DNA of 64,000 nt, taken from assembly GCA_965644495.1 (NCBI GenBank), contig CBFFSA010000014.1:275906-339905 (forward strand), written 5' to 3'. The translations under genes and the position numbers were made by a program. The notes under the pieces were generated by a model. It saw only the letters and a program-made list of their open reading frames with translations, was not told where the DNA came from and made no database searches. Numbering within the stretch: the first letter of the stretch is position 1; every line of letters starts with the position of its first letter. Source of the stretch: Perkinsela sp. CCAP 1560/9 (lineage: Eukaryota; Protista; Euglenozoa: Kinetoplastea). Positions 4,973 through 64,000 of this stretch are shown in pieces.

Positions 4973-5174
4973 AGAAAAGTATCAAATAGGTTAGCACGAT
5001 TCCATTCAAATACCAGATTTTGCTATACACAATTATTAGACTATAGGCGCGCTATAGGAGTACTTTGAGAATGGATTGACTTGAGAGAGATAATTGCGGT
5101 GGTTGTATAACTACCGCTCTACCCTCGATTATTGCAAAAAGTGAATAAAAACAGTGAAAATATAAATATAACAG

Positions 5175-5730
5175 TAATATAATAGAAGAAAAAAATATAA
5201 AAAGGGGCTCCGGTGGTCCAAAATTGAAAAAAAAATTAAAAAAAATGGGAGGTCCATGGGGGGGAGGTGTCCAGAGGGGGTCCAGGGGGGGGCACACCCC
5301 ACGATTTTTTTTTGAAAAAAATATTTTTCGAAACAAACCAGAAGGGGTAGCCGAGGTCTTGGTGCGCATTTTCCACCCCCCCCTACCCCGGGGTGATCCC
5401 TCTGCGTATCCGCAGGACGGTTCCGACAAGTTCGGAGTTTTTTTAAATATTCAAATTGGCGAAAAAAATCGTAATATTTTTGTTCTCCAAAATCGTGTCC
5501 CCTATTGTATTTAGAGAGTTTGAGACTTATACTAGCTTTCTGCGCCGTCGCTTTCGCAAGATACACTTGCGACCACTTCTTTCGTACCACTTCTTGAAGC
5601 CGAATCTTGGCCGAATTTTCTTTTTTATACTCTTCGTTAAATGCGGTGGTAGTTTTCAACGCGAAGCGCGCACGAGTGACTTCTAAGTTGAAAACAACCA
5701 CCGTGTTTAACGAAGAGCCTAATATTTTTT
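5175..5730. repeat. Dispersed transposon-derived repeat
   Basis: 5175-5470 matches 43300-43690 (GGGGCTCCGGTGGTCCAAAA...GCGTATCCGCAGGACGG); 5633-5715 is a long hairpin also seen at 52078-52161 and partly at 14940-14985. Confidence 0.8.
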
Positions 5731-5764
5731 TATAGAGAGAGAGATAACATTTGTTAGAGAGTAA

Positions 5765-6889: not shown

Positions 6890-7275
6890 AGCAAAAACTT
6901 CGAAGAACTTTATTAAAATAAGAGCCTCGTAATGTGTGATGACTGAACAGTTGTAGTTCTTTTTCTCTAACTATTGTCAAAAACGATCTCGTTTCTCCCG
7001 TAAGAGTATGAAAAACAACCGTCTGATAAAAGACAAAGCGAGAATTGGGTATCTTGACAGACTTCTAGTGAGGTAATATTCAGAATACAGTTGACAGGAT
7101 TCCTCCAATTTTTTGTTTTGTAGGAATTGCGCGTTGTCTATGTACATGTGTATAAGGCATACTTGTAAAATAACATTCACATGATTTTATGATCATGACC
7201 ACGTTGCGCCTCTGTAATGTTCAATATGTTTCTGTATTTTTTAAATATGCTCAGTAGAGTTTAGGAGTCCTGGCT

Positions 7276-8330
7276 TCATTGCCACATATGTACAGAATCA
7301 ATATGTACATTTGGTGGTATTTGCTGCGGAATGGTACTTCTAATAGGATTTCCGATAAGCCCAAGCTCAGTCTCGGGTGACATAAGGGAAAAATCAACGC
7401 CACTAAATTTATTATAATCCAGTGAGAGGGTAACAAGAGAGGGAAGGATTTTATTTAACTGAAGGTCTCCTTTGAAAGAATTGGAGCTCAGATTAAGCTC
7501 GCTCAATTGGCCAGACTGAGTGTCCCAGAGAATTTATTTCCATTGAGAAGCAACGCTTCTAGCCCGTGGGGAAGCTTTCCGAGGTTCAGTTCTCCGCTAA
7601 GCTGTGTACTGCTAATCACAAGAACACGAAGCCCTTGTGGCAATAAATCAATTTCCAAGTCCCCTGTAAACAAATTGGCACTGAGGTTGAGATATCGTAA
7701 AGAGGAGGGTAGCTTGTGCAACACCAAATGACCCGACAACTTGTTGTGCTCAAGCGAGAGTCCTGAGAGTCCTGGAGGGAGATGGAGCAAATCTACAGGC
7801 CCACTGAGTTTGTTGTGGTTAAGATGTATTTCGTCCAATCCTTGTGGCAACTCTCCTAATCCCACGGGGCCTTGAAATCCATCATATTGTAGGTTGACAG
7901 TGCGTAGACTGTGTGGTAATGAGTCCAGAATAAGCTCACCAGTACATTCCTCACTGCACAGATACAACATAATGAGCTCCCCCGGTAGTGCGTGAAGTGA
8001 GGCATTGCCATGAAAGCCGTTGGAGCCCACGTGGAGGATTTGCGTAGTGGGGGGAAAACAATCCCACGCGAGATAGCCTCCAAGGTTCTGATGCGACCAG
8101 TGCACCCTTCGCACCACGCCTTGCTCATCACATCCCACTCCAAACCAACGGCAGGCAGGAGTCGAGTGCGTCCAACTTTCATGGGGAGTGTGTACGTGTT
8201 GAATCACACGGAGAAGAGAGAGCTCGGCGGAGAGCATTGCCCCGCGCACTTTTTGTGGTTTTCGTGTAGGGCTGGGGGTATCCCTTGCAAAACACAATCC
8301 CGAAGAAGGAAAACAAAAGCTTGCTGACAT
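7276..8330 (-). pseudogene. LRR protein with LRRNT cap, frameshifted near the 3' end
   Basis: W...TPACRWFGVGCD cap and LPxxLxxLxLxxNxLSG repeats; 7503-8330 stops at LSLAN* and repeats resume in another frame (LSELNLSSNSFKG), about 4 residues short of a repeat; could be an assembly error. Confidence 0.75.
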
Positions 8331-9267
8331 GAACCGATACTAAAATTACCAAAACAAAACAAAATTACACAATAGAGTAACAGAATTCAGAAAATGTATT
8401 AAAAATTTACCTTAATGTAGCGTAGAAAAAGACGAAAAAAAGATCCCGGCTTATTGTGCTGGGTCCTCAAAAAATAGTGCTAAAAATTGTCCAATTTTCG
8501 CAATAAAGATGGTCTGAGAAAGGCTTAAAAAGTACCCCTTTCCATTTTCGAAGGGACAACTCTGACTTCTATGTCGGGTGGGGATCATGTATGTCTTGTA
8601 TGAGCTTCGCAAACTCGGCCTCTACGGGCAGTGACATTCCGCGTATTTTTCCAAGACGCGTTTTGGGATGGGCTTCTTCGGATGCTATAACACAGAGCAT
8701 CAGCAAAAGTTTTAGGAAAAGTATAGGTCGTCGTGGAACGCATAACATTTTTCAGATGATTTTTTACATTTTCCACTCATCTACTCGCTTCATGCATAAA
8801 TGTATTGTGCGTGTGTTTCCTTCTTGGTTATATTCCTTCTTGGTGTATTTTGATGAGTGTTTCACCATTTCCATGGTAGTAAATTCCCATTTAAAGTTTA
8901 GACATAAGATTCGTCAGAAATTTTAGGATAGCACCAAAAAAAGAACTTTAGGATAGTATCAAAGCGTTCGGCAACACGTCAACGAATGGATTTAAAGTCC
9001 ATTCAAAGTCACTTTAGAGAAGAGGAGTACAAGCCGATCTTTCTCTTGGCAACATGTTTTTGCAATAAAGTAATCGGTGTGGTGAGTGTTCAGAAAGACA
9101 TTGTTCGTTCTAAACTTCCTTTAAAAGCCCTAGCGTAGTTGCGAAGGACCTACACCTGTTTGTTGTCCAAACACTCACCAAATTTTAGTGAGTGTTTGTC
9201 AAACATTCTCTCAAGTTTGTCTGAAAAACGACGCATCGGAATATAATATGCACTTTATGCCGGCGGC

Positions 9268-11307
9268 TTAAATCAGAAACGGCTTCACAATGCTGCCATC
9301 ATGGCTAAAAAACATTGTTGAAACTGTAGGCAAAGTTGAAACTGACCCTTTTAACAGCGAAGTGTCTGAATCTTCGTCAAGACTTCCGGGTGATAATGAA
9401 GAAAACGGCTTCTTCGGGTCTTTGTTTATCGCCTCAGAAATGTGATGCGTCCAATTCGGAAGACACGTGGGCCAACTGTAACTGGGTAGTTGGTCACGTA
9501 TTATGTTATGTCGGTCCCATTTTTCTGTATTCCCTACTTCGCGATGAGGAAAAATATGCTGATATGCCGTCGAATCGGCAGGAGGACATTCTTTCCAAAC
9601 GGAAAATTCCTTTTCAAATTTGAGCAAAAGGTATTCACCAGGACCATTTTTCCGCGCGTAGTTTATCGTTTGTTCAAGAACATACGCAAGTGATGCAAAA
9701 GATTTCTCTATTAAATCGCGCTTAACATCGTCTTCCATGTTGCCAGTGTTGTGGGGAAGTCGGACTATGTTATCTGAATTGGATTCACAATAAAATGTCT
9801 CTACATGCAAAATACTAGACGTATATGCATTTACTCGAACGCAATGAGTTTGAGGATAAAAGGGAATGACTGTGTGCAATCGAATACGTTCTGCCAGCGA
9901 CAATATTTCGAATTGAAAACCTGTTGGATCATCCGGAATTTGATTGTACATTTTGTTGTGGTATTCCATCTTCACCAAGAGGTATTCGAAATATACAACT
10001 TGGCGCACCAATAATTTCACAGGACCGACTTGCACAACACGATACACGAATTCTCCGCTCGAATCATCCACCTGTCGAAGCCCTTCTGCTCGAATAGCGT
10101 TTCGAAAAAATATACGATTTTTATTCCGCGCAGAGCATGCGACTCTTGAAAGCGGCTTGCCCAAATAAAGAACCCCATCACGAGACACATGCGTGGGTAC
10201 CCGCGCTCGGCTCGTCTCCACATCCGCCACCAGGTCACACAGCAGCGTGAGAAGCGTACCGAGTGATAGCACGACGTGACAACCCAACGCTTTGGCTTGC
10301 TCCCAACACTTCGGGTCCTTACTCACGGGAGGTCGGGTGAGTGGCTTGCGAAAACATTTCTTGGTCTTCGGCTTTTGATTTTCTTTAATTTCTGTGTTAT
10401 TCCCATCCGTGGCGACGCTCTCGTGGTTGTACCGAAGACAAGGAGTAATCCCACTGGGGGAGAGGTTCACGTGCTGTCGTGGAGGTCCATGCAGGAAGGG
10501 GTTGAGTGTAATATCCATTTGATGAGGCGGTACGGTCTGAGGGAGTTGCAGAGGCTTTACGTGGGGAAGTGAAGCGTAGATCTGATGGGTAGTGGGGCCA
10601 AGCAGCTCCCCGTGTAACGGTGGCAATTTCTTCCAAATCTCCGGGCTGACCTCAAGGTTCGCTTTGGTGGCGCGGTTGTAATGGGTAGGATATTGCGAAA
10701 GTCGTTGTTTTCGGACTTCCATAAGGTTATCGATGGCGCTAATTACATGCGGAAAGACACCCAAACAGGTTTGACAAACATGCTCTTTAATTTTATGCTC
10801 ACACATACGGCAACGCCGGAAAGAACGCTTTTGCTCTTCAAAGTATTTGGGGTGCGTTCCATGTATCGTTTTCTTATCGGATGGCTCATTTGCAGCTGTA
10901 CTCAATGATCTCTTCCTGGCGTGTGTATCGGCAGGTGTCATTTTTCTGCTTTCTGTTTCAGTGTGTAGTGCATCATTCGGGAGCAATTTGCGAAGTATTT
11001 CAACCGTATGTTTGGGAATTTCGGAAGTAATCTCGCGTGGAGGAGGAAATGATGCATAATCTTGCCATGAAATAAGAACCTTTTTTGCCGCCCGGGAAGC
11101 TTCATGTCCCGGAAGTTGAGTTCCAAAATGAACATGATCGCTCCGATTTAATTGCGAAGGGCCTGGTGGGAGTGCACGAGGAACTTTTGTCGGCAACGAC
11201 CATTCCTTCCACAAACTTTCAACGGGGGGAGAACTTGAGTTCATGTTGTCGTCGGCATTCTCTTCCGTATCACTCATGGAGTACGTATGTGTGAGTCTAG
11301 AAATCAA
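9268..11307 (-). CDS. Hypothetical protein with NARG2/ICE2 C-terminal-like domain and a CxxC..CxxC motif
   Basis: YLGKPL....ARNKNRIFF, VKLLVRQ, LVKMEY...FEILS, VRVNAYTSSIL resemble the NARG2_C pattern; ORF itself is secure, family call is tentative. Confidence 0.6.
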   Translation of the reverse strand: MISRLTHTYSMSDTEENADDNMNSSSPPVESLWKEWSLPTKVPRALPPGPSQLNRSDHVHFGTQLPGHEASRAAKKVLISWQDYASFPPPREITSEIPKHTVEILRKLLPNDALHTETESRKMTPADTHARKRSLSTAANEPSDKKTIHGTHPKYFEEQKRSFRRCRMCEHKIKEHVCQTCLGVFPHVISAIDNLMEVRKQRLSQYPTHYNRATKANLEVSPEIWKKLPPLHGELLGPTTHQIYASLPHVKPLQLPQTVPPHQMDITLNPFLHGPPRQHVNLSPSGITPCLRYNHESVATDGNNTEIKENQKPKTKKCFRKPLTRPPVSKDPKCWEQAKALGCHVVLSLGTLLTLLCDLVADVETSRARVPTHVSRDGVLYLGKPLSRVACSARNKNRIFFRNAIRAEGLRQVDDSSGEFVYRVVQVGPVKLLVRQVVYFEYLLVKMEYHNKMYNQIPDDPTGFQFEILSLAERIRLHTVIPFYPQTHCVRVNAYTSSILHVETFYCESNSDNIVRLPHNTGNMEDDVKRDLIEKSFASLAYVLEQTINYARKNGPGEYLLLKFEKEFSVWKECPPADSTAYQHIFPHREVGNTEKWDRHNIIRDQLPSYSWPTCLPNWTHHISEAINKDPKKPFSSLSPGSLDEDSDTSLLKGSVSTLPTVSTMFFSHDGSIVKPFLI

Positions 11308-33550: not shown

Positions 33551-34163
33551 TTATGATCATACGCTCGTGGCGCAGAGATACGTCTCTCTGTGTGACGGCC
33601 GATACCATCGGCGCATGACCCGCATACGACGGGTGTCACACAGAGAGTGGAGTGCGAGGTAGGAGACGAGACGCCCATCGGTCATGCTACAGCACGTATA
33701 GCCATGGTTCATGCTGCAACACGGTCAAGCCGTGGGTTCATGCTGTCAGATGGTCTATCGTGGATCATGATGCATCATGGGGAGGTCCGTTACCGCCGCA
33801 CTCGCTACAGCATGTAGGGAGAGAGGCGTGCAAGTTCGCATCCCCTATACACGCATACAACGTGTCCTCCCGCTGTAGCACGCCCAGTGGTCCTCAAGGG
33901 AGGCCACCATGGCGCATAGCTCCCGGGAGAAGAAAGCACGAGAAGGAGAGAGCCGGGGAGGGAAGAAAGCTCACTCGAAGAGAGCGAGCCGGGGAGGGGT
34001 GAAGAGTGCGAAGTGCGTCCCCTACTTCCGCGACAAAGAGGGACAGTTTCAGCTAGCCGTCAGCCGGAAACGGGCATTTAAAAGTAAGAATACGCCCGTT
34101 TCCGGGAAAAGAAAGGAAGGGCTAGCAAAATGTACCAACAAGGTACAGAAACTGTATCTTTAT
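33551..34163 (-). mobile_element. SL-RNA-headed non-coding element, copy 1 (613 bp)
   Basis: Starts ATAAAGATACAGTTTCTGTACCTTGTTG|GTACA; ends in stem-loop + ATAA; absent from the intact paralog. Confidence 0.85.
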
Positions 34164-34230: not shown

Positions 34231-34804
34231 TTTTTTGTTTATCATGCGCTCTTTGGCGCAGAGATAATCCCCTTAATGCGACGGCCGATGTCATCGGCAC
34301 ATAATCCGCCCACAACGGATGTCGCCAAAGGGGATTCGACGCGGACTCTGTCGGTAGAGAGGTCCAGACAACTCGCCTCTCTTTACGCAGCCGGAGGGGC
34401 GTACTGCAACCGACTCGGTCCCAGTCGGTAGAGGTGGTCCAGGCAACTCACCATCTCTTTACGCAGCCGGAGGGGCGCACTGCAACCGACCGCTGCCTCG
34501 CGATAATGCAAGGCAGAGTCACGCCCGGTGGTCCTCAAGGGAGGCCACCATGGCGCATAGCTCCCGGGAAGAGACAGGCGCGAGAAGAAGAAAGCCGGGG
34601 AGGGAAGAAAACTCACTCAAGGAGTGAGCCGGGGAGGGGTGAAAAGTCGGAAGTACGTCCCCTACTTCCACGACAAAGAGGGACAGTTTCCGCTAGCCGT
34701 CAGCCGGAAACGGGCATTTAAAAGGAAAATGTATGCCCGTTTCCGGGAAAAGAAAGGAAGGGCTAGCAAAATGTACCAACAAGGTACAGAAACTGTATCT
34801 TTAT
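34231..34804 (-). mobile_element. SL-RNA-headed non-coding element, copy 2 (574 bp)
   Basis: Same 28-nt head, ends ...GATAAACAAAAAA, flanked by a 5-bp direct repeat (CGTTA 34226-34230 and 34805-34809); internal ~73-bp tandem duplication 34352-34490. Confidence 0.85.
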
Positions 34805-35715
34805 CGTTACAGGTGAAGCAAAGTTTTCGGTAAACAGGTGAAATCGATTGACCCAGTGAAAATATTATGAGCGAAGTTAGCGTCCATGGTTTGTGGCGGT
34901 AATTCATTGAGAGACAACTCCCCAGTAAGCTGATTATTGGAAACAAGAATTTGGAGCACTGAGCATGGGAGATATTTCAAAACAATAATGCCGTTTAGAG
35001 CACACTTTCCCCAACGCAACTGCGACACATTATCTCCCTTGTCACATATCACATGATTCCATTCACATGCTGGCGTGTTGGTATTCCAAGAGGGATCGGT
35101 ATTGCTGACGTCTTTAATAAAGTTTGCAAGTTCGTATTCTGGTGGGACGTTGGCACCACGAATCCGACCGGGACGTGACGACGGAACGTCCTCTGCCATA
35201 CGTATAATATACATGTATGAAGGAAAACTGTGATACATAGCGCAATCGGAATAATACGTTTAGGGGAACAGAGAATCAAAGAAAAACGTAAATAGACTCA
35301 TGTATTTGGTGAAATAACGTGAATGAAATTTACCATCAAAAATATTTGCAAAACGAGCTCCTCAATTCGGAAAAGAATATAGGAATTTCCTGTACTGAGT
35401 GATATAAAATTTTCAAAAAAGAAATGTGTCTTGCGGAGCGCAATGACTCCAATGATGGAGTTTTCAGATCCCTCAACCGATACCGTTCACATGCTATCTT
35501 TCATTTACATGATGTTGCTTTGATAATCGAATGGAGATTGAGCATCTCCAATGTACCGCATTTATGTGAGACGTTTTTACAATGAATCCGACCAGCACGT
35601 GTTGTGTTCATTTAAGCAATGCCCTCAGCTGCCCAGAAAATGAAGTATCTTACTATAGGGAACATCTAATGCTAATTCGAATAATATTATAAATTATTAT
35701 GTGACAGGGCAATGG

Positions 35716-49375: not shown

Positions 49376-49460
49376 TTCTGTACCTTGTTGGTACATTTTC
49401 CTTTAGTTCATCTTTTCTTTCCCCGGCAACGGGCATAGTCTTACTGTTTTGTATGCCCGT
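49376..49460 (+). mobile_element. Third, divergent SL-headed element 5' fragment, cut by a TA-CTGTACCCCCCCTAG MITE end
   Basis: TTCTGTACCTTGTTG|GTACATTTT...ACGGGCATA..TATGCCCGT homologous to the 34-kb copies. Confidence 0.8.
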
Positions 49461-50896: not shown

Positions 50897-51420
50897 TGGT
50901 AGACAATCTTTTGAATCGCAACAGACACTTGGCAGATGAACCAGTTCCTCTCCCTAAACATAACAGATGCATACTAGCGGCTTGGCGCGACGAAGTTCTA
51001 AGTAATATACCAATTGAACCCCCTCCGCACCCCGATGTGGTGCCTCACAACCATCGGTTATACACGGACGCGTCCAGTAAGGGATGGGGCGCAGTCCTTT
51101 ATCTGGATGATGGCCAGGTGCATAACTCATGGCCACATGATTTTCATTACGAAGTAAACCATGCGGAAGCGATGGCCGTGACGAATGCCATAAGAGATTT
51201 CGGGCATCATTTTAGAAAGGGGACATGCCTAGATTTGTTTATCGACAACACGTCCTGTCAGGGTGCCATTAACCGACGCGTCGCTAGATCCGACAATATA
51301 GCCAGGGAGCTGAAGAAAGTTTTAATGATTAGTCGACAAAAAAGGTATTTGCATTAAGGCTCAATATGTACGTTCTGAAAACAACCCTGCGGATCCGGTG
51401 AGCCGTTTAGAAAAACATTA
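50897..51420 (+). pseudogene. DIRS/TATE-like RNase H fragment
   Basis: LYTDASSKGWGAV, VNHAEAMAV, LFIDNTS, then YVRSENNPADPVSR in a shifted frame. Confidence 0.85.
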
Positions 51421-51874: not shown

Positions 51875-52840
51875 GAGGGGCTGCGGGTATGCATCACCGA
51901 ACCCGCACCGAACCCGTGCTTTGCATTTGAGGTCGAACGAGGTCTATTTCAGCCCAAAAAAATGGATTGTACACGTACAAAGTAGCTTACAGTGTAGTTT
52001 TTTTAGCTTGTTACCGTACATAGCCGCCTTACTGTGAAAATACGGTGTATGCTGTATATTTTTCTTTTTTAGTTTCTTCGTTAAACGCGGTGGTTGTTTT
52101 CAACTTAGAAGTCACTCATGCTGCGCGCTTGGCGTTGAAAACTACCACTGCGTTTAACGAAGAAACTAAAAAAGAAAAATCGCCAAAATATCATAAATAA
52201 TCTATTTTTTTGGGTGAAAATTATATCATGTACGGCATTACCAGAGAGCAACTTACAGATTTTTTTCTTGAGCTGCGGAGAGCAAATCCTCTTGTCGCCA
52301 CGGACACTGATCTCAGATGCCTTAGCTCTTCCTTAGCTATGTGCGCTTTGAATTGTACATGGGAGCAACTGTATGATTTACAGCCCATGTGGATTGCTCC
52401 CGAAACCCCTCCTCTATCCATCAGGACTCTCCGCGATGACTTTAGCCGAATCGCTGAGCTTTGCCGCTCCCCTGCTCTAATGAATCCAAAACTTCGTTTC
52501 GAGCATGGGATATCTTGGTTGTCTGACGTCACATGTATGATGGACGTCACGACAATTCCATGCCGTGCAAGAAAACCTCGGGACGTATGGGACGAAGCTT
52601 TACAAGAAAAGAAGACAAAGGATTCAACTTATTCCGGAAAGCACAGGGAACGCTGTTTCAAAGTGGAGTTCTGGCTAACTCTTGCTGGAGTCCCCATATT
52701 TTTTCGCGGGCCAGTTCCAGGCAGTGTGCATGACGCAAAGATATATAAAGAGAGAACTACTCACGGAGCCTTCCTTTTTGATCAGCATGAACAAGAAATG
52801 TTTCTGGCAGATCTAGGGTACGTGGGTTGTCCTCGGTATA
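51875..52840 (+). mobile_element. PIF/Harbinger/ISL2EU-like (DDE_Tnp_4) transposon, 3'-truncated at the Tc1 insertion
   Basis: MDVTTIP, YSGKH....FK, PGSVHDAKI, LADLGY in ORF from 52210; GAGGGGCTGCGGGT end motif upstream. Confidence 0.85.
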
Positions 52841-52856
52841 AGAAGCTATATATATA

Positions 52857-54416
52857 CAGGGGTGAAAACCTCGTGGTGGGGGGGGGTCTAAAATTCGTAA
52901 AAATTATCCAATTTTGGAAAGTAATAGCGCATTCGAGAGCTCTCACAGAGTTGTATGTTTTAGCACTATTTGCGGCCTGTGACTCAACATGAAACGATGA
53001 GACAAAAAAAATCATGATTTTTTTTCTTGCCCAAATTTACTTTTTTTTCAGTTTTTAGCTGTTTTTCAGTCAATATTAGCACTATATGCCCCAGAAACGG
53101 ATTCGTTCCCGAACCTCACGTAGTGTACTCAGCGACAGGTCCTATTCCTCCCCCGCACGGGTGATACCAAGTCACCGTATGCTTCTTGTCTCAGATTATC
53201 TTGAGACAGGGTCCTATTCTCGGACAGCCCAAAACTTCGGCGTCCACGAAAATACAGTAAAACGTCTTGTGATACGCTATGAGAACACTGGAGACATGGA
53301 AAGCTCTCCTATTTCACGCCCATCTCCTGTCAGTACCCCTGCGCTGCACGAAGCAGCTATCCGCCTCATTGATGAGGGATACCGTGACCTCCCGTACGGG
53401 ATTGAGAACTGGTGTGCACTCCATAGAGTTGTGCTTTCTCTTGGATTTCAGTGTTCAAGAGCAACTTTGGTTAACGCCATGAAGAGCCATGGTATGATCA
53501 TGCGAACTTTAAAAAGAAAGCCCGCACTGACCGATGAACACAAGAGGAAACGAGTGCATTTTTGTTCTGAGATGCTCACTTGGTCAGATACCCAACTGAG
53601 ACAAATTGTTTTCTGCGATGAGAAGAAGTTCACTTGCGGTAGGGGACGAAACAAAATTACTTACCTTTGCCGGAAGACTGACCCCGCCAAGGAACAGCAG
53701 GGAGAGCTAGAACCTTGGTATGGAGGGAACGGCGTCATGGTGTGGATGGGGGTCAGTTTAAATCATGGATTTCATCTACACATTTTTCCCTCCCACGACC
53801 CTTCCGGCCGAAAAGTAACTGTAACAGGGGATGTTTTCAATGATGCCATGAAGAAGCGCAAAGGACTTTTAAATTATTTGAGGCGCCACCCATCTGGGGT
53901 CGTTGCAATGGATAATTGTCCTGTTCATAATTCTGCGCGAACAACCTTTCGCAACGAAGGTATTAATGTACTCTCTTGGCCTGCAAAATCCCCCGATTTA
54001 AACATCATTGAAAACCTTTGGGGGACCATGGACAGGATCAAAAATGATCTTCGACCCAAGAATCGGGCTGAATTAGTATCGGCCATTGAGACAGCGTTCG
54101 AAAGATTACAATCAGAACGCAAGCAAGAATGTATTAACACGATGAGCAGTTTCCGCAAGCGTTGTCGCATCGTTATTGAGCGAAACGGGTCTTCCTGTGG
54201 GTATTAAGGGTAATTTTTGACCATTTTTTACAGTTTTTAAAATTTGCAAATCGTGTTTTTGACCCTTCCATCAAAGGGGGGCACCCCCCTAACCCCCGCA
54301 AACTGCCTATCTTAAAACATACAACTCTGCGAGAGCTCTCGAACGCGCTATTATTTTCCAAAATTGGACAAATTTTACGAATTTTAGACCCCCCCACCAT
54401 GGGATTTTCACCCCTG
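52857..54416 (+). mobile_element. Full-length Tc1/mariner transposon, intact ORF 53086-54207
   Basis: ~105-bp imperfect TIRs starting CAGGGGTGAAAA within TA runs; HTH, KPALTDEHKRKRVHFC, VFCDEKKF, MDNCPVH, WPAKSPDLNIIENLW. Confidence 0.95.
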
Positions 54417-55099: not shown

Positions 55100-57330
55100 T
55101 CAGACGTAAATCTTAAAGACAGTTGACTTCCTGTGCCTGGAGATGAGTTTGTTATTCCAAATCGATTTTAACTCGTGTATTTTAGTCTGTGCTGACTTTA
55201 TGCGTGATCGAATTTCAGGTCCCAGTGAGGCGTCTTCGTCAATAATAGTGCCTAGATAGGTGAACTGCTTTACTTGCTCTATTTTTACTCCGTGTAAAGT
55301 AAAGTCATCTGAGTAGTATTCTACCGCATTTTTTGGTTGGATGATTTGCAATTTGGTTTTAGACGTATTTATTGCTAAACCCCAATGTTCAAGTGTTTCA
55401 GCCAGCACGTTCGCTGATTGTTGCAGTTCTTTTAAGTCGTCGCTCCACTGGGCAATATCGTCCGCGTAAGACGATAGGCCAATAACGTCTTCACCTTGTA
55501 CACGGTTTCCTCTGCATGAACGCCCGCTGGGCAATCTCCATCGAACTTTGACACCAGAATGTGCTTTTTGGGAGGCAGCTCTAATAATACAGTCCAGGAC
55601 TCCGTTAAAGAGGATGCAGCTCAGCGCGCACCCTTGCTTCACACCCGTCAGAATATCAAATTTAGCACTTGTTGATCCATCTGTTGCCTTAACTGCTGCC
55701 GTAGTCCCGTCGTATAAAGCTTTTATCAGCTCTGCAAGGTGCCCACATACATGTATGTTCATTTTCCCTAGAACTTCCCACAAGACGATTCTAGGTATTC
55801 GGTCGTACGCTTTTGTGAGATCGATATAAAGTATATAAAGTGGTGTTCCTGTTCTATGTGCCTCCTCTGTAAGCCTCCGAAGTATAAAAATTGAGTCATC
55901 CGTGGACCGACTGGTTCTGAATCGATTTTGAGATTCCAGTAGCCGTCGGTCGATCCTTGGGGTAATTCTTGCGAGAAGAGCACTCGTTAGCACCTTAGTG
56001 GCGATATTGATGAGCGATATCGGTCTGTATGCATTTGGATCGTCAAGTTTTCCTGCTTTGATGCCCTTATAAACCCCCCACAGCGAAAAGTCACCCCCCT
56101 CTAACTTTTCAGCCAAGTGTCCGTTTGAGCTCATTTTTGTTGCATTTTGCTGTTCCCAACACAAAGACTTTGCGCGTTATAGCATGGAACCAAGGCTCTC
56201 AAATGCGTGCATCCGATAGATGGATTATCACTTCCTTCACATTTTTCAAGAGACCAATTTCTCACCCTTTAACAAAATAAATATTCCCCCCCCATGAGAA
56301 ATTCAGTTATTTTTGTCCGTTTTTGCTGATTTTTGTTGCGAACGAGAGATCTCGTTCTCCTAGCAAAGATCTTTGCCGCTATTTTTTAATATTGACCCAC
56401 TTGTGCCCCCTGGCCGCGGAGTGTTTGTTTTCTTAAATTAGTGTGGTATGACGATGCAAAAAAATAGAACCAAAAACAATTTTCTTTTTCAGTTTCTAAA
56501 ATGATCTAAAAATGGCGGGAACGTGTAGATCTCAGAATTTTGAACGAGAAAATGATATCTTAACCCCCTTAGGCCCCTTCAAGCAAAAAGTAAAGGGTGA
56601 CTTATTCGCTGTGGGGGGTTTATATGCAGGTAATCTGGGAATGTTTCCATGACTTGGGCATATCTACTTTTTCCCAGCAGAGGATGATGAAGTCCGCAAG
56701 GCGAGCAATAGTGGATTCACTTGCATATTTGAATAGTTCCGGTCGTAGGCCGTCTGGGCCTGGAGATTTAAGGTTCTTAAAGGCTTTGATATACCCGGAC
56801 ACCTCGTCGGCTGTCGGAGCGGCATTGTTTTCCCTTTCTTCCGATTGTCGTGTCGCGAGTGGTATCTCTGAGTGTTCAAAAGATTCAAGGTCATGTTTAA
56901 CCATTGAAAGATCGAACTTAGTGCTGTTAGTTTTGTGGATCATTCGCAAGTGTTTTGCGTGTTCTTCAACAATTTCTCGTGGGTCTGAAATAGACTTTTT
57001 ATCTGAGTTCGAAAGTGGGCAGTTCCCGTAATTGGGAATCTCATTGAGGCGTGAAAGGCGTTTTAGCGTTAGGAACATATTATGTTGGAGCCCTCTCCTT
57101 GCTTCCCATTCTAGTCTTTCGGTCTCTTTTTTGAAGTGATCCTTTTTTGCTTCTCTGCAGGCTTTGTTGGCAATGTATCTCGCTTTCCTGGATAGTTCTT
57201 TGGCGTCATCCTTATCGGCAAGGCTCGCATCCCTGATCCGTTCAAAAGCATTTTTCTTATTCTGTACTGCGCTCAAAGCCGCTTCCGTTATATTCTGGAG
57301 CAAAATTTCGATTTCGATCAGAGAACGGTG
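55100..57330 (-). mobile_element. RTE-like non-LTR retrotransposon RT fragment, split by a MITE
   Basis: KSPGPDGLRPELFK, YRPISL, IDLTKAYD, GVKQGCALS, YADD, FTYLG; removing the MITE restores ITCIYKGIK in frame. Confidence 0.92.
56072..56620. mobile_element. 549-bp non-autonomous Tc1-family element with TA TSD
   Basis: TIR AACCCCCCACAGCGAA.AAGTCACCC; internal blocks match 42415-42480 and (inverted) 16380-16730. Confidence 0.92.
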
Positions 57331-57332
57331 AA

Positions 57333-58341
57333 TTGTATGAGCTAAACGTAATGCCGATGGGACATCGTTGTGCGCCTGAAATAATGCACACAATCACCGC
57401 TACACTGGCAGGAGACCCGAAGTACTGCACAGAGCAGGGTGCATATTCCGACTCTTTTCAGGCAGATGTTTATGTCGATGGGTTGAGATTTGCTGGTACA
57501 ATTGAACAAACCGAAAAATATAAGGATTTTGTGGATAAGCGCGCACAGGAAGTGGGTGTAACGTTCAAGGATATAGGCAAAGAACCGATGCAACAGTACG
57601 TTTTTAATGGAGTAGAATACTGCCACGAGGAAGGAAGAGTTAGAATGGGACCTAAAATCGTGAAGCGCATGCAAAACGATCGTTTTCGGAACACGACTTA
57701 TGGAAAATTGGAGTCAGCAGTTGGAAGGTTGGTTCACGCATCGTTGGTTCTGGGTGAGCCCATCGCGAATTATCATTTTACGTTAAAATTGGTTCGTCGG
57801 CGTATAAATGCACTCAACAACAATCCATCATTACTGGACAGGAGAGCGTATCTCCCCCCGTATGTAACGATAGAGTTAACCAGGTGGAAGCACATATTGA
57901 TTTCCAACAGATTAATAACCCCTCCACCGCATCCTGACACAGTGCCACACCGCCACAGAATTTACACCGACGCATCGGGAACAGGTTGGGGAGCGATTCT
58001 CTACTTAGATTTTGGTCCTATTCTTTGTGTGGGAGATAGGTGGGAAGATGATTTCGTGTACGAAGTAAACCGAGCGGAGACGAGGGCCGTTCGTCTTGCG
58101 TTCGAAAAATTAGCGCATCACTTTCGACGTGGAACCTGTATCGATTTATTTATCGATAACACTAGCATCCATCAAGAAGAAGTCTACGAAGTCGGATGGG
58201 ATCAGTATGGAGCTCACTGGGCTGTTGAATTTTTTAAGGAAGCAAGGAATTGCAATTCAACCCCATTATGTAGCATCGAAAGAAAACCCCGCTGACCCAT
58301 TGAGCCGGCAAAGAATTGCGAAAGGGGAAACAAGTGACTAG
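57333..58341 (+). mobile_element. DIRS-order (TATE/VIPER-like) RT-RNase H fragment, frameshift near 58165
   Basis: MPMGHRCAPE, VYVDG, YTDASGTGWGA, NRAE, IDNTS, YVASKENPADPLSR. Confidence 0.88.
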
Positions 58342-58355
58342 CGAAAGGGTGGTCT

Positions 58356-59078
58356 CCGCGTGGACACCCGTTCGCGATAGGGAGGGATGTATATCTCTCT
58401 GGGAGGTGAAAAGGATAGGTATAAAATATTTGATTATTTTGCGTACAAATAATGAAAGATGCATCACATTGGAAATTCAGCATACAGGTGGATAGTCGGT
58501 TGAAAAGATAATGAGAAATACATGTATTTTAAAATATTTTGAGATATTTCAATAGCAGATTAATATTAGGACTCGAGTAGTATGCACTTGTGAAATTAAT
58601 GTTTCTTTCCCGGAGAGCAATTCTAGAAGTTTACGAATAGAATTGTTCGAAGGGATTTATACGCCGATAAATGGCCGGCGGGCATTGTACGCTTGTATTT
58701 AAAATGATTTGAATATGCAGTTTAGTCCATACGATTATCGCTTTTATTTGAAGAAGTGTTTTTCTCCATACAAAACTTTTTGTCTCACCCACCAGCCCCC
58801 AAACCACTCCCCGCGTGGACACCCGTTCGCGATAGGGAGGGATGTATATCTCTCCGGGAGGTGAAAAGGATAGGTATAAAATATTTGATTCTTTTGCGTA
58901 CAAATAATGAAAGATGCATCATATTGGAAATTCAGCATACAGGTGGATAGTAGGTTGAAAAGATAATGAGAAATACATGTATTTTAAAATATTTTGAGAT
59001 ATTTCAATAGCAGATTAATATTAGGACTCGAGTAGTATGTACTTGTGAAATTAATGTTTCTTTCCCGGAGAGCAATTC
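58356..59078. repeat. Two ~268-bp direct repeats (58356-58623, 58811-59078) downstream of the RT-RNase H
   Basis: Near-identical CCGCGTGGACACCCG...CCCGGAGAGCAATTC blocks. Confidence 0.92.
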
Positions 59079-59082
59079 GAAC

Positions 59083-60100
59083 GAGAAGGTGCAGCAAGGC
59101 CTACGGTGCAATATTTAGTTCCTTTCACAGTGGTGGAAACAGATGACGATGGTGATAAGCGACGACGATTTATTTCCTGGACACAATCCGACAACGAACG
59201 TCTCTCGGATTATGAACCGAGTGTGCCGCTTTGGCATCCTGCAAAATACTTACATCGTGTGGCCGAAGAGGTAGGGGTGAAGCGAGATTTAGCCTCCGGA
59301 TTTTATCAAATTGCTATTCCTCTTCAATTTCGCGCAAAAATTCGGTTTTTCTCCGATAGCGGAGTATTGTATGAAATGAAGGTGCTGCCCATGGGGCATA
59401 GGTGCGCCCCGGAAGTAATGCATTCGATTACGGCAGCGCTAGCGGGAGATGATTGATTGATTGATTGATTGATTAGCGCTAGCGGGAGATGCGGCATATT
59501 ATAAGCCAGGTGACGCTTACACAAAGGGTAAACTTGATGTTTACATAGATGGAGTCCGTTTTGCAGGGACATCTCCCGATGCTATACATTACGCGTCTTG
59601 GATTGATGGACGGGCACGTGCGGTAAATGCACTTTTTAAGGACAAGGGATGTCAGCCTGTTGCTGCGTACATTTTTAATGGTGTTCAGTACTATCACAAC
59701 ACTCATCGGGTTTGCCTGGGCCCGAAGGTTGTGCGCAAGTTACAAAGAAATAAATTTATGAATCTCACTTTCGTGGAGCTTGAGGCGGCGGTGGGGCGCC
59801 TTATGTACGGCTCTGCGGTGCTTGGAGTAGTTATCCCGAAGTACCATTTCGTCATTAAGGTGGCGCAAAGACGGATTAACCTCTTAAATCGATTCCCCAG
59901 TATCGCAAATAAGGAAGTTGATTTGCCCATGAAAATTCGGGCAAAGCTGGGCGAATGGCGCAACGAATTGGTATACATTAGGCCTCGAGAGCCTTTGCCG
60001 CATCCGGACTTTGCACCGCACAAAAACAAGCTTTATACCGATGCGTCGGGGAAGGACGGGAGGCATATTGTATTTGGATACCGGCGAAGTATCCATTGTA
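59083..60100 (+). mobile_element. Second DIRS/TATE-like RT-RNase H copy, disrupted
   Basis: PFTVVE..RRRFISW, RDLASGFYQI, LPMGHRCAPE, VYIDG, LYTDASG. Confidence 0.88.
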
Positions 60101-60582
60101 GGGGGGAGGTGGGGACTCAACTGGCCACGTTAACAACGTGACATTGATTGTTTTTGTTCTATGCAGGCGTGCTTCCTTTTATCTGTGTTTGTGCGTGTGA
60201 ATTATCTACGATATGTTTTGGTACAATTTGAGAGTAAGATTGGATTATTCATACTTGTTTATTTATATATGTTTGTTTATTCATATATGTTTTCATGTAT
60301 ATGTTTCCAGGAGCCCCTCGGCGTGGATTTCTGAATACTTATTCTTGTTATATTACTTTGACATTTCATAGAAGGTTCAGTGAGCCCTCGCCGTGAATTT
60401 CTTACTCTGCCCCGGTTGTGACATGTAAACTTGAGTAAGTAATTTTGGTTTCGCTTATATCTGTAGAAAAAATACTCAATACTATTTCACATTAGTAACA
60501 ATTTCTTTCACGTTATTTCACAGAAAATTTTTCTGTGGGTGGGTGCCGGCGGTACCCAGTCGTCAGTTTTATTTACCAAGTG

Positions 60583-60600
60583 AGTTTCTGTACCTTGTTG
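60583..60600 (+). other. SL exon 3' part fused to a 5' UTR
   Basis: AGTTTCTGTACCTTGTTG directly followed by 36 nt that upstream (60496-60531) follow an AG. Confidence 0.85.
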
Positions 60601-60636
60601 TAACAATTTCTTTCACGTTATTTCACAGAAAATTTT

Positions 60637-61311
60637 ATGCCTCGTAAGTCATCTGCTGAAGTCGAAAGCGTTAACATTACACAGCGTCACGACGACTCAA
60701 CACAGGAGTTCCAAACCCCTGCCCCGGCTCACCGTGTAACCTTTGCGGAGCCTGAGTTTGTTGCTTCCCCTCAGGAAGCTCTTCACATTGAAGCAGATTT
60801 TAAGAAAATGTGTACAACTCTGGAACAAATCGCTTTGCAGGTAAATCGCATGGAACAAACGCACAACAACCTTGGCACTCTGGTTCGCGAAGAAGTCAAA
60901 CGCGCCCTGCCACGAATGCTTAGCAATGTCAATGATACAGCAAACACCGAGCCAACTCAGAATGTTGAAGTATTGCCACCCCCTTATCGCTCACCAATGT
61001 CCGAAGATGAAGTCCATGATAAAGTTATTTCTATTTCCGCCATGCTAGAGGAGAATGAGCTAGAACTTGAAGTGACGTGGTACTTGCAACATTCGGCCCC
61101 GGAGACGGCTAGTACATGGCGCGGAAGCCCGAGAGTCAGTTGTGACGATGAAGGACAACCGATTCTGATAGTGAAGTACACGCGTGGAGAGTATCCTTTG
61201 CCAAAAGAAGGTGTTCGATATGTTCGCATAATGGTGGTAAACAAGGTTCCTCTTATGCCAGGTAAGATTGATTCGGATGAAAGCATCGAAGTACAAGAGC
61301 ACGGAGGGAAG
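60637..61311 (+). CDS. Retroelement ORF1/gag-like protein, truncated by the LINE insertion
   Basis: Coiled coil then VTW.......TWRG......VKY....PLP..GVRY..I, recalled as resembling kinetoplastid SLACS/CZAR-type ORF1 (unverified); the last codons come from the LINE tail. Confidence 0.45.
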
Positions 61312-64000
61312 TCCTATCCTATCCTATCCTATTAGGCTGACTTGCGTCGGCTGAAAGTACTACTGCTTCGTTTTTCGTGAAAACAATTTTCTCTTAGGTG
61401 AGTCTTCTACCTTGCGACCCACAATCTTGTGTAACTCCCTTGACCCTTTACGCTCTTCTCTCGCTTCCTTAACACATTCCGCTTCCTGGAGTGATTTTCG
61501 GTCTTTTGATGACCCTGTTCCGGTAGATGGTAAAAGCGAGGAACCCTTTTTGGGTGCACGTTCCTCTGCAGAAGTAGTGTATCCTCGTTTGTTAGATGCA
61601 ATGGGTATTGTGCCGTCGTTTGCCGGGGTCTTTCGTGTCGGGCGAACGGAAAGACGCAAGTTTTTAGATTCACGTCGTTGAGAGTCTCGAGCACTCAATG
61701 TCTTCATCCTCTTTGTCAACTGGGAAGAAAGAGGTTTCCGTGAAGCAGCGAGAGCCAAAGCGTCAGCCTTGTCATTGTACGCATTTCCGTTGTGGGCCTT
61801 CACCTTACAAACGTAGATTTCAATATTATTGCTTTGAAGAATACGAATCTTTCGATCTAAAAATTCAAGAAGCTCACCATTCGCCACCTTCTTGTATCCT
61901 ACTACTCGTTGCCGCATCCTTACGTGATGGAAAAAATTCCACACGTAAAAGGAATCAGTGTGCACCAACACAACTTCGGATCCCTCAGGTATTCTTTCAA
62001 GTGCCTCTTTGAAGGATTCTGCCTCAGCTTGTTCTGCTGAGTCAACGTCCAGCCTCAAAGAAGCATAATCATCATTCACCCACTTGCGCCTGATCACGAT
62101 TCCCGCCCCCCCTCTGCATTCATTTGTCGCCTTGATATAGCGTACCGAACCATCGATGTACATGTGAACTTCCTTTTCCCGAACTAGAAAAATTTCTGAG
62201 TTTTCTTCTACAAATTGCAACTCACTAATTGATTCGTGTTTCAGAGCATGGTTATACTTACTCTTCCATCGCGAAGAGGTGATCCTCTCATAGTCGACCA
62301 ACGGTTCCAGAGAAAGCCTGAGAGAGTCACATAACTTTTGCCGGTGTTGTCGGTCTTGAGAAAAAACGAGGGCTTCTTCAACCGTTATCCCGAGATCATG
62401 AAAACATTCCTCGCTAGGAGACATTTGCCTAGCGTTCTCTCTACTTTTCCACTGAAGCAATTCTCGAAACACTGTTGAGTGACGAATCATGTGACCCACC
62501 ACCTTTGCCCTGCTTACACGATGGATGGTGTTGAAGCGAGGTGTTCCACGATAGAGAGATTCTAGGGGATAACAATGACCGAATTCGTCTAGTTTGACAT
62601 GATTGCAGGCAAATCGTCTCATCATGTTGATTTCAACCTCAGTTTTCCTGACCATAGCATTCGAGATTGGTAGAGATGAAATTCCAAAAGTAAGAACAGG
62701 ATATACCAAACAATCGAACAGGCGGAGCTTAGTGGAGGCGTCAAGGGGTGAGTTCCAAATTCCTTTGAGACGTCGAAAAGCGGCCCAGGTCAATGCCAAT
62801 CTATCCTTAACTGGGGAGGAGGCACCGGTTTCTTGAAGCTGCCCCAGATACCTGTATTTGTCAACATATGGAATTTTGCCCAGGTAGGCCGTTCTGAGCT
62901 CCTTTTGTCCACCTGGAACTCTACCAAACCCCATCCATGCTGTTTTCGTCTTGCCTATGGCGATTTGCAAATTCGCTCTTTGAGACTCCTGAGCCGTGAG
63001 GTCAATCATGCGGGAGATCTCACCTTTAGTTGATGCCAATAGAGCGATATCATCAGCATAGTTGATGTCTTGTAGCCGTACCTCTTGTAACCCTCTGCTC
63101 TTTGTCCCTTGGCTCCTAAGAAGAACCCCAAAGGGCCTGCCGTCCAATGCTCGGTGTAGAATGCGGTCAACGACAAGAATGAAGAGATAAGGTGCCAAAA
63201 CGTCCCCTTGAAGAATACCAGTTGTGATTTGAAATGAAGTCGTATTTCCATAGGGGGTCCGAACAACACCATGAAGACCTCTGTATATAGACATTATGGT
63301 TCGCAGCATTGCAGGGCCAACGTGGAAAGCCTGAAGCGCAGCCTTGATAGCCTGAAAAGAGACAGAGGGAAATGCTTTCGCAAAGTCCAGAAAAGCGACC
63401 ACCAACCCAGACTTGTCTCGACATGCCCTGGTCTTCACCTCGTTAAGGAGTATTTGCGCGCCGGATGTAGAGCGTTCTGGGCGAAACCCATACTGACTGT
63501 CCCGCAGAATTGGTTCTATGGTCGGTCGAATTCGTTGCAATATCATGCAGTTCATCAACTTAACGATGCTATTAACTAAGCATATTGGGCGCCAATTTGC
63601 TATTTGAGATAAGTCGCCCTTCTTCGGGATAGGGACTTGAACTACAGTCTTCCAGCATTCAGGGGCAACCCCCGTAGCTCGAACCTCATTAATAATATCA
63701 AGCATCGCTAGCTTAAGTCCACTATGCTCCGAAATAATGCTTATCACTTCAGCCGGTATTGCATCAATTCCTGGAGCTTTATTTCGTGCAAGTTTAGAAA
63801 TTCCATGAATAAGCTCCTCTTCCGTAAATGCTCCATCTTGTATTGGAGTTGATGGTTTAACAACATCGTCGAACTGAATTTCAGAATCCCCTAAGTCATT
63901 GCTACCCATCCTAGAGAAGAAATCTCGGACTACATTCAGAGTCTCTTTGGTAGATGAAGTGTCAATGCAAAGCTTTGTCCTAGAATTGCCCTCCGGGTGA
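61312..64000 (-). mobile_element. RTE-like non-LTR retrotransposon with C-terminal RNase H; runs off the window
   Basis: ORF 61360-63909: KAPGID, WRPICL, DFAKAF, GILQGDVLAP, YADD, YRYLG; RNase H YIDGS, AEQAE, HTDS, KVKAHNG..YNDKAD; 3' hairpin plus (ATAGG)4 tail. Confidence 0.93.

What the first reader, a model, noticed from the sequence alone, without database searches (positions are those of the whole stretch)
60494..60640. Genomic fossil of trans-splicing: SL exon joined exactly at an AG acceptor
Seen: TAACAATTTCTTTCACGTTATTTCACAGAAAATTTT occurs twice. The first copy follows AG (60494-60495). The second follows AGTTTCTGTACCTTGTTG (60583-60600), with no GTACA intron start, and leads straight into the ATG at 60637. 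Inference: cDNA of the trans-spliced mRNA of this ORF was reinserted at its own locus, placing pre- and post-splicing junctions side by side. It independently supports the SL identity and its 3' boundary, and implies reverse transcription of mature mRNA.
Basis: partly seen in the sequence, partly recalled or inferred. Interest (0 to 1): 0.8.

Follow-up and report, generated by a model that had tools for sequence, protein, structure and literature searches.

The report
Spliced-leader scar in recombinase retrotransposon
The doubled 36-base stretch is real, but it marks the head of a jumping gene (a VIPER/TATE-type retrotransposon) that was copied back into DNA from RNA already carrying the cell's spliced leader; it is not an ordinary gene's mRNA reinserted at its own locus.

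Summary
An exact 37-nt direct repeat lies at 60495-60531 and 60600-60636. The first copy follows AG. The second follows the last 16-18 nt of the spliced leader (SL) and runs into the ATG at 60637.

Reverse transcription of a trans-spliced RNA, the SL 3' boundary and the AG acceptor are all supported. Three points are not.
- The ORF is not a host gene. It is the Gag-like ORF1 of a VIPER/TATE-like tyrosine-recombinase retrotransposon, cut at 61313/61314 by a LINE.
- The layout is not a one-off reinsertion. At least three independent sister cases in my loci show [outron-AG-5'UTR]-filler-[SL-5'UTR-ORF1]. The upstream copy is the element's split direct repeat A.
- The 50 nt between the copies are the start of repeat B, whose native place is the end of ORF3.
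- "GTACA" is not the SL intron. The real SL RNA gene continues GTATGAGAAG. The window's SL+GTACA units are 5'-truncated SL-headed retroposons.

Contigs from three runs of one study carry every junction. No RNA data were available.

This scan reached the same general reading on other windows of this genome (s1-689798, s1-686837). New variant of a known kind; interest 0.5.

The parts
59100..60141 (+). Degenerate RT/RNase H (ORF3) fragment of a VIPER/TATE-like element, upstream of the finding. It is not shown to belong to the same copy.
   Evidence: tblastn with L066 ORF3 covers aa 381-687 in two frames, E 1.7e-49. ORFs are listed.
60423..60495 (+). 'O': the left part of split direct repeat A, that is the outron. 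It starts with the conserved terminal motif TGTAAACTTGAGTAAGTAATTT and ends with the acceptor AG (60494-60495).
   Evidence: Homology to other subfamilies begins at 60423/60424, with 90% identity over 40 nt. The same motif is the left terminus with differing flanks in sister copies, and it follows the B1 end in the 3' repeat of L067.
60496..60531 (+). 'A' copy 1: the 5'UTR in its unspliced context, forming the right part of repeat A.
   Evidence: Exact repeat. In sister subfamilies repeat A likewise ends 0-5 nt before the ORF1 ATG.
60532..60535 (+). tctg: junction bases of unassigned origin.
   Evidence: Not covered by the B homology.
60536..60585 (+). 'B': the first ~50 nt of split direct repeat B, containing the imperfect palindrome GGGTGCCGGCGGTACCC followed by CCCAGTCGTCAGT...CAAGTGAG.
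   Evidence: 98% identical to C39:61690-61739 and 97% to C1:3144190; 85% to copies lying 3.9-4.2 kb downstream of ORF1 in the L006 and L010 elements. In its native place B overlaps the end of ORF3 and occurs again after repeat A (L067:10421-10480 and 10766 onward). Native flanks appear as loose ends of public contigs. Hairpin. Alignment.
60583..60600 (+). SL relic: the last 16-18 nt of the 38-nt SL exon. The first two bases (AG) are shared with the end of B.
60601..60636 (+). 'A' copy 2: the 5'UTR as it stands in the trans-spliced RNA.
60637..61313 (+). Gag-like ORF1 (first ~225 codons) of the retrotransposon, 3'-truncated. The open frame runs on to 61335 inside the LINE tail.
   Evidence: 46% identity to 400-460-aa ORF1s with RGG tails. 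Homology ends near aa 219. No Pfam or PDB match.
61314..63909 (-). Non-LTR retrotransposon (RT plus RNase H ORF, 849 aa) whose 3' end, with a (TAGGA)n-like tail, abuts and truncates ORF1.
   Evidence: Pfam RVT_1 at 5e-30 and RNase_H at 1e-14. Another copy's contig matches only from 61314 onward (table 7).

Best explanation
Window 60423-61313 is the 5' end of a VIPER/TATE-like (order DIRS) tyrosine-recombinase retrotransposon copy that was made from a trans-spliced RNA.

Element layout. These elements carry split direct repeats: A1 - gag/YR/RT-RH - B1 - A2 - B2. Repeat A consists of an outron ('O', with a conserved terminal motif), an AG acceptor and the whole 5'UTR ('A'). Repeat B begins with a hairpin at the end of ORF3.

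Shown steps.
- The cell's SL is joined to the base after the AG of repeat A.
- The SL relic stops at the exon boundary.
- The 50 nt between the two UTR copies are the start of repeat B.
- The same order recurs in sister elements.

Inferred steps.
- The template RNA was SL-5'UTR-ORF1...ORF3-B(start).
- Normally the lost outron is rebuilt because the cDNA end switches within the 5'UTR to another copy of repeat A. This gives the scar-free copies of the form O-A-ATG.
- Here reverse transcriptase ran on into the SL, stopping 16-18 nt from the SL's 3' end.
- It then switched, through a 2-nt AG overlap, to a template carrying A followed by B, and copied B(50 to 1), A and O.
- That leaves O-A-B(1-50)-SL-A-ORF1: the RNA's 3' module and its SL-capped 5' end sit head to tail behind a rebuilt repeat A.
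- A LINE later cut ORF1.
For: Element identity. The ORF has 53 matches in the genome. Full relatives are ORF1 followed by ORF2 (Phage_integrase, 6.7e-8) and ORF3 (RVT_1, RNase H). Split direct repeats were read in full in L066 and L067. They match the A1...B1-A2-B2 layout and the Gag-YR-RT/RH order described for VIPER/TATE (PMC6681497).

SL identity. The true SL RNA gene was read in L034.

Recurrence. The layout [O-AG-A]-filler-[SL-A-ORF1] occurs in three more independent events:
- L063: 2-nt filler, SL of 37 nt, acceptor ACAG|ACTT.
- L064: 45-nt filler, SL of 36 nt, acceptor TTAG|ACAG.
- L066: 64 nt of B, SL of 13-15 nt.
Scar-free copies are L012 and L020. Upstream A copies end at one fixed point just before the ATG in L064, L066, L026, L014 and L015, and within 2 nt of it in L063.

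The spacer is repeat B. Supported, and by native flanks in public contigs. A directly followed by the same form of B is also seen in L006 on the minus strand.

AG rule. It holds in 3 of 3 cases where there is a clear outron.

Assembly support. Contigs of runs X1, X2 and X4 carry every junction with no differences and at even depth.
Against: - No RNA data. The only possible RNA run laid nothing on the stretch, so use of the AG at 60494-60495 and the RNA's 3' end are inferred from DNA alone.
- This subfamily has no second copy. The 36-nt UTR is unique in the genome, so its own 3' repeat could not be read.
- The 3' half of the element is destroyed by the LINE.
- The A-to-B joint here has the B1 form, not the 'x'-containing A2-x-B2 form seen in the 3' repeats of L066 and L067. 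A plain copy of the 3' repeat therefore does not explain it.
- There is no poly(A) between B and the SL.
- One sister junction (L008) is not preceded by AG in its unspliced relatives and has an inverted B.
- The supporting runs belong to one study and may be the assembly's own data.
Confidence: 0.62

Rival explanations
1. Homing into a resident repeat. An SL-capped cDNA of the element was joined at the DNA level into a pre-existing solo or terminal A-B module (SIRE-like), at a preferred point about 50-65 nt into repeat B. The upstream O-A-B(1-50) would then be older resident DNA, not rebuilt in the same event.
For: - O-A-B stands contiguous in another, diverged copy (C62:18353-18515, 70% identity, match ending where the SL begins).
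- The SL joins B at similar depths in two subfamilies: about 50 nt here and 64 nt in L066.
- In T. cruzi the solo A2-B2 module SIRE exists (PMC6681497).
- These elements often sit inside one another (L064 lies in another element's ORF1).
Against: - In L063 and L064 the SL follows repeat A with no B at all, so there is no single target point.
- Tyrosine-recombinase insertion at a site in B would not be expected to leave a 5'-truncated SL.
- The downstream partner junction cannot be examined here.
Confidence: 0.2
2. A mature mRNA of an ordinary cellular gene was reverse-transcribed and recombined back into its own locus, giving a one-off duplication of the 5'UTR.
For: The two UTR copies are identical and 105 nt apart, and the UTR occurs nowhere else in the genome.
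Against: - The ORF is ORF1 of a multi-copy retrotransposon family.
- The spacer is a module of that element.
- The same layout recurs in three other independent events.
- The region is a nest of retroelements.
Confidence: 0.05
3. Assembly artefact: a chimeric join or a collapsed repeat created the doubled UTR.
For: The region is repeat-rich, and short-read graphs break inside the 37-nt repeat.
Against: - Contigs 60296-60524, 60502-60629 and 60607-61600 (X1, X2) and 60532-755 (X4) carry each junction without differences.
- Their depths are 40.6, 40.6 and 48.7. The only path through the graph that uses each piece once is the assembled one.
- Sister loci show the same architecture.
Confidence: 0.03

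Closest known systems
VIPER / TATE (VIPER-like) tyrosine-recombinase retrotransposons of kinetoplastids, and SIRE
   Same: The ORF order is Gag-like, then YR, then RT/RNase H. Split direct repeats are laid out as A1 ... B1-A2-B2 (PMC6681497; seen here). From my own knowledge of the older literature, not checked here: the T. cruzi SIRE module, which equals A2-B2, provides trans-splicing acceptor sites. That parallels the acceptor inside repeat A here.
   Different: No SL relic inside such elements is described in the papers I could search. Here the SL is written into DNA between repeat modules. Kinship to VIPER or TATE by tree was not tested. ORF1 has no Pfam family.
Relict spliced leaders of dinoflagellate retrogenes (mRNA recycling)
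   Same: A genomic copy of the SL sits exactly at the 5' end of a transcribed unit and is taken as proof of reverse transcription of mature mRNA (PMC6050394, PMC5585692).
   Different: In dinoflagellates the carriers are host genes and the relics stack by re-splicing at an AG inside the SL. Here the carrier is a retrotransposon that brings its own reverse transcriptase, the SL is of the kinetoplastid type, and the unspliced acceptor copy stands beside the spliced one.
Retroviral/LTR strand transfer through R, and the DIRS-1 internal complementary region
   Same: A terminal repeat present at both ends of the template lets the growing cDNA regain sequence missing from the RNA. Here that missing sequence is the outron removed by trans-splicing.
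   Different: The 5' end of the template is set by trans-splicing, not by a promoter. The scar would be a transfer that came too late. The mechanism is inferred, not shown. For DIRS-1, linear single-stranded cDNA intermediates have been reported (PMC7192593, title and abstract only).
SLACS / CZAR / CRE site-specific non-LTR elements in SL RNA genes
   Same: A retroelement is physically next to SL sequence in a kinetoplastid-type genome.
   Different: By my own knowledge, those elements insert into SL RNA genes, which keep their intron. Here the SL relic ends at the exon boundary, has no intron and lies far from the SL gene array.

Membership tests
VIPER/TATE-like YR retrotransposon (order DIRS) | Three ORFs in the order Gag-like, tyrosine recombinase, RT/RNase H | tested here: met
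   Met in relatives of the window's ORF: L064 has ORF1 of 416 aa followed by Phage_integrase (6.7e-8); L066 ORF3 hits RVT_1, RNase_H and RT_RNaseH. In the window itself only the ORF1 fragment and separate ORF3 fragments remain.
VIPER/TATE-like YR retrotransposon (order DIRS) | Split direct repeats A1 ... B1-A2-B2 | tested here: met
   Read in full in L066 minus strand 4758-9860 and L067:10421-10958. The window keeps repeat A (60423-60531) and the first 50 nt of B.
VIPER/TATE-like YR retrotransposon (order DIRS) | RT and YR group with VIPER/TATE in a tree | not tested
The protein search returned only five unnamed relatives.
SL-relic retrocopy (as defined for dinoflagellate retrogenes) | The SL in DNA ends at the exon boundary and is joined to the transcript body at an acceptor | tested here: met
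   ...CCTTGTTG|TAACAAT; the same TAACAAT follows AG 105 nt upstream.
SL-relic retrocopy (as defined for dinoflagellate retrogenes) | The carrier is a host gene with a poly(A) remnant | tested here: not met
   The carrier is a retrotransposon ORF1. The 3' end is removed by a LINE at 61314, so a poly(A) remnant is not testable.
SL RNA gene | Full exon followed by the GT intron of the SL RNA, in a tandem array | tested here: not met
   Only 16-18 nt of exon are present, followed by TAACAAT. The true gene has a 38-nt exon plus GTATGAGAAGC..., a 297-bp tandem and a neighbouring 5S rRNA gene. No Rfam match in the window.
LINE-mediated processed pseudogene | Poly(A) tail and target-site duplication | not testable with these tools
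   The 3' end is lost to the LINE insertion. No duplication is seen at the 5' side.

The most novel reading that the evidence does not exclude
In this kinetoplastid-type protist, trans-splicing sets the 5' end of the retrotransposition template of tyrosine-recombinase retroelements. Their split direct repeats then serve to regain the outron that splicing removes. SL scars such as this one are failed or late strand transfers. They preserve, in DNA, both ends of the template RNA: the SL-capped 5' end, and a 3' end about 50-65 nt into repeat B. That would give the first sequence-level handle on how split-direct-repeat elements replicate.
Probability: 0.45. Interest if true: 0.7.

Novelty: new variant of a known kind. 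Interest (0 to 1): 0.5.

Why it matters
How tyrosine-recombinase retrotransposons with split direct repeats replicate is still largely a matter of models. A scar that holds the unspliced acceptor, the spliced product and the element's 3' module side by side says three things: which RNA was copied, where it began, and roughly where copying started. In organisms without gene-specific promoters it also shows how a mobile element can survive losing its upstream sequence to trans-splicing.

For annotation, the finding gives a caution. In this genome most SL sequences are retroelement heads, not SL RNA genes. The 18-mer occurs 616 times, while I read only one tandem pair of true genes.

The case is one more example, in an old single-copy subfamily, of a phenomenon this scan had already met on other windows of the genome. 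It strengthens that picture rather than opening it.

Tried and rejected
- Rfam on the whole window at gathering score, and on 59000-61400 at E<=1: no family, no ribozyme, no SL RNA.
- Pfam and PDB sequence searches of ORF1: nothing significant.
- Word-index protein search with ORF3: only five unnamed relatives. The two I placed (P0001, P0002) come from one ENA assembly, which carries the same SL and a 95-100% identical ORF3 (P0001). It is therefore the same or a sister organism and not an independent comparison.
- Literature: the SL 3' end as a string gave no paper. 'Spliced leader' with 'retroposed' and 'kinetoplastid' gave none.
- Reading the upstream ORF3 fragment (59100-60141) and 60141-60423 as the same element's ORF3-B1, which would make the locus a permuted circle junction. 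Not supported, because 60100-60423 does not resemble B and is a mosaic of other repeats.
- An internal inverted A-B copy as the universal template for the rebuilt repeat. It is present in the L006 type but absent from the fully read L066 element.
- Dating the event from the two UTR copies: 36 nt is too short.
- The copies of B and O-A-B at C39:61690, C1:3144190 and C62:18353 could not be read.

Full report
**Observation**

GTAACAATTTCTTTCACGTTATTTCACAGAAAATTTT stands at 60495-60531 and 60600-60636, identical in both places and 105 nt apart. There is no third copy in the window, even with three mismatches allowed, and none is expected by chance.

Copy 1 follows cacattAG. Copy 2 follows AGTTTCTGTACCTTGTTG (60583-60600) and is followed by ATG at 60637. 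The one extra shared base (G) is unavoidable, because both an acceptor AG and this SL end in G.

**The spliced leader and its gene**

The 18-mer occurs 616 times in the 21-Mb assembly, spread over the contigs, against 0 for the reversed control.

One place, L034, has the features of a true SL RNA gene. It carries a 38-nt exon AACTTTAACGATAAAGATACAGTTTCTGTACCTTGTTG, followed by GTATGAGAAGCTTCG. Two copies lie 297 bp apart, and a 5S rRNA gene scoring 99 bits lies nearby. The exon tail ...CAGTTTCTGTAC... is the kinetoplastid SL motif; that recognition is my own knowledge, and the string search returned trypanosomatid papers.

The window's three such units carry SL pieces of 33, 28 and 15 nt (34777-34809 and 34136-34163 on the minus strand; 49376-49390 on the plus strand). 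Each is followed by GTACATTTT.... The 33-nt one interrupts a leucine-rich-repeat ORF. These are 5'-truncated, SL-headed retroposons, as earlier notes of this scan also concluded.

In my sample of 50 distinct relics, 15 are 36 nt long, lacking only the first two bases. The rest are spread from 10 to 37 nt. That is the pattern expected of reverse transcripts, not of gene duplicates.

**What the ORF is**

ORF 60637-61335 has 53 matches in the genome. The best are 46% identical, in open frames of 400-478 aa. These longer proteins end in RGG-rich tails and have no Pfam or PDB relative.

In 10-kb stretches the family ORF is followed by two more ORFs. The first carries a Phage_integrase domain (6.7e-8). 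The second carries RVT_1 and RNase H domains. This is the Gag-like, YR, RT/RH order of VIPER and TATE (PMC6681497).

The window copy is cut. Homology ends near residue 219. A public contig of another copy of the neighbouring minus-strand LINE matches only from 61314 onward. The LINE itself encodes RVT_1 and RNase_H. Upstream, the window holds three ORF3 fragments of such elements, at 51058-51354, 57282-58364 and 59100-60075. The locus is a nest of retroelements.

**The repeats of these elements**

In the best-sampled subfamily a block starts with ATAAAACTCTTGGAAATGTAATTGGG and ends with ...AATAAAAGTGG. Its left flank differs in every copy, so its start is the element's left terminus. It contains two acceptors, TTAG|ACAG and ACAG|ACTT, and then the 5'UTR.

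After ...AAAAGTGG the copies diverge five ways:
- AAATG and ORF1 (L012, L020);
- the second repeat;
- a short 'x' plus the second repeat;
- filler plus SL;
- or an internal deletion.

L066 (minus strand) shows a whole element. Repeat A comes first and the ORFs follow. Repeat B begins at the end of ORF3, then repeat A again, then B again, then the flank. L067 shows the same for the subfamily nearest the window: B1 at 10421-10628, A2 at 10629-10741, x, B2 running to ...CGGAATCGAAATTA, then the flank.

This is the A1...B1-A2-B2 pattern reported for VIPER. Repeat A therefore consists of outron, AG and 5'UTR, and it ends 0-5 nt before the ATG.

**The window in that frame**

Homology to other subfamilies starts at 60423/60424, with TGTAAACTTGAGTAAGTAATTT. 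It is 90% identical over 40 nt to elements whose ORF1 is only 46% identical. So 60423-60531 is repeat A.

The spacer 60536-60585 is 98% identical to C39:61690-61739. It is 85% identical to sequences 3.9-4.2 kb downstream of ORF1 in the L006 and L010 elements. It aligns with the start of B in L067 and L008 and with the B that directly follows repeat A in L006 on the minus strand.

Loose ends of public contigs show its native neighbours...ACCAACTAGCGAC before it and CTAGTTGG... after CAAGTGAG. The first resembles the ORF3 end of L067. So B is cut after CAAGTGAG, and the AG there overlaps the SL relic.

The order is therefore O-A, four unassigned bases, B(1-50), SL(16-18), A, ORF1.

**Recurrence**

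Taking each SL relic in my loci and searching upstream for the sequence that follows it gave the same layout three more times:
- L063: A, then tg, then 37 nt of SL, then A from the second acceptor.
- L064: A, a 45-nt pyrimidine-rich filler, 36 nt of SL, then A from the first acceptor, heading a complete element.
- L066: A, 64 nt of B, 13-15 nt of SL, then A, also heading a complete element.

Relic length, filler and acceptor all differ, so these are separate events. In all three acceptor sites where I had both forms, the unspliced copy shows AG before the joint.

One further junction does not fit. In L008 the relatives have ...GTACG before the joint, and a complete inverted B abuts the SL.

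**Mechanism**

Shown:
- An RNA of the element had received the SL at the AG of repeat A and was copied into DNA.
- The start of B lies between that copy and a full repeat A.

Inferred:
- The scar-free copies (O-A-ATG) need the outron to be regained from another copy of repeat A.
- The scar arises when reverse transcriptase runs into the SL before switching.
- The switch lands, with 2 nt of overlap here (AG) and in L066 (TT), on a template where A is followed by B.

The A-to-B joint has the B1 form here, in L066 and in L006 on the minus strand. The 3' repeats of L066 and L067 instead have an extra x segment. In L066 the joint shares GTGG with the ORF3 end. The template and the number of jumps are therefore not settled.

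A DNA-level alternative, insertion of an SL-capped cDNA into a resident A-B module, fits this locus equally well, and I give it 0.2. It fits L063 and L064 less well.

**Support from reads**

Three runs of one study hold the stretch; none is RNA. Their contigs break inside the 37-nt repeat, as 31-mer graphs must, but they cover the following pieces without any difference:
- 60296-60524, which includes AG and A;
- 60502-60629, spanning A, B, SL and A;
- 60607-61600;
- and, in X4, 60532-60755.

Depths in X1 are 40.6, 40.6 and 48.7. The only path through the graph that uses each piece once is the assembled one. These runs may be the assembly's own data. The possible RNA run laid nothing on the stretch, so expression and acceptor use remain untested.

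**Comparison with what is known**

The element is VIPER/TATE-like by gene order and repeat layout. Placement by tree was not done.

SL relics as proof of retroposition are well known in dinoflagellates. There, however, the carriers are host genes.

I found no paper describing SL relics in tyrosine-recombinase elements. That is limited to open-access text.

Within this scan, other windows of the same genome gave the same general reading (s1-689798, s1-686837). They also described SL-headed SINEs and an internal inverted copy of the joined ends. I re-derived the main points from my own loci.

**Limits**

The copies at C39, C62 and C1:3144190 could therefore not be read, and a genome-wide census was not possible. 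I did not seek another route.

**Verdict**

The reading is partly supported: the RNA origin, the acceptor and the SL boundary hold, while the host-gene and own-locus parts do not. The finding is a new variant of known kinds, and one more instance of a phenomenon this scan had already seen in the genome. Interest 0.5.

Noticed in passing
window 34136-34163 and 34777-34809 (minus), 49376-49390 (plus): SL pieces of 28, 33 and 15 nt are fused to a short non-coding repeat that starts GTACATTTT. The two minus-strand units lie 641 nt apart, and the 33-nt one cuts a leucine-rich-repeat ORF (34807-35238). These are SL-headed SINE-like retroposons, not SL RNA genes.
   Followed up: partly
L034 (G000:C1:659819-662836), minus strand 1830-1700 and 1533-1400: The true SL RNA gene: a 38-nt exon plus GTATGAGAAGC, two copies 297 bp apart. 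A 5S rRNA gene lies about 400 bp upstream of the pair (plus strand 2225-2343).
   Followed up: partly
loci L008-L066, 15 distinct relics: The commonest SL relic is 36 nt. It lacks the first two bases (AA) of the exon, and in most cases a T stands at the preceding position. This could be a signature of reverse transcriptase meeting the modified cap nucleotides of mature SL.
   Followed up: no
window 60423-60461 versus L006:1063-1102, L062:8066-8105, L065:6883-6922: The first 40 nt of repeat A are 90% identical between subfamilies whose ORF1 proteins are only 46% identical. This suggests a cis-acting site, such as a recombination or terminal site.
   Followed up: no
L008 (G000:C25:96293-99760) plus strand 2330-2570: A complete inverted copy of repeat B abuts the 5' end of a 36-nt SL relic heading an ORF1. 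In the unspliced relatives this SL junction is not preceded by AG (...GTACG|TGTTAGAAC).
   Followed up: partly
L067:10742-10765 and L066 minus strand 9572-9596: Between A2 and B2 a C-rich segment (CCCRCCCRCCTCCCC...) replaces the left arm of the B hairpin. It contains the complement of that arm's GTGGGTGGG.
   Followed up: no
window 60300-60340: This is a fragment of a repeat found at 30 or more places at 93% identity, often with a 419-433-bp period (for example C34:57792, 58211, 58630). It looks like a satellite-like family. A related motif also flanks the element in L063.
   Followed up: no
L061 (G000:C16:198000-207999): A 3.76-kb tandem unit made only of Gag-like ORFs. It consists of an SL relic, a UTR, a partial ORF1 paralogue, repeat A with its acceptor and a 401-aa ORF1, with no recombinase or RT.
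   Followed up: no
L067, L068 (ENA ERZ24900291): This public assembly carries the same SL 3' end and an ORF3 that is 95-100% identical to G000 copies. It is the same or a sister organism.
   Followed up: partly
window 52210-54207: Two plus-strand ORFs of 260 and 373 aa. The second looks like a DDE transposase with an N-terminal helix-turn-helix. A related 701-aa ORF in L063 hits DDE_1. The window ORFs themselves were not scanned.
   Followed up: no
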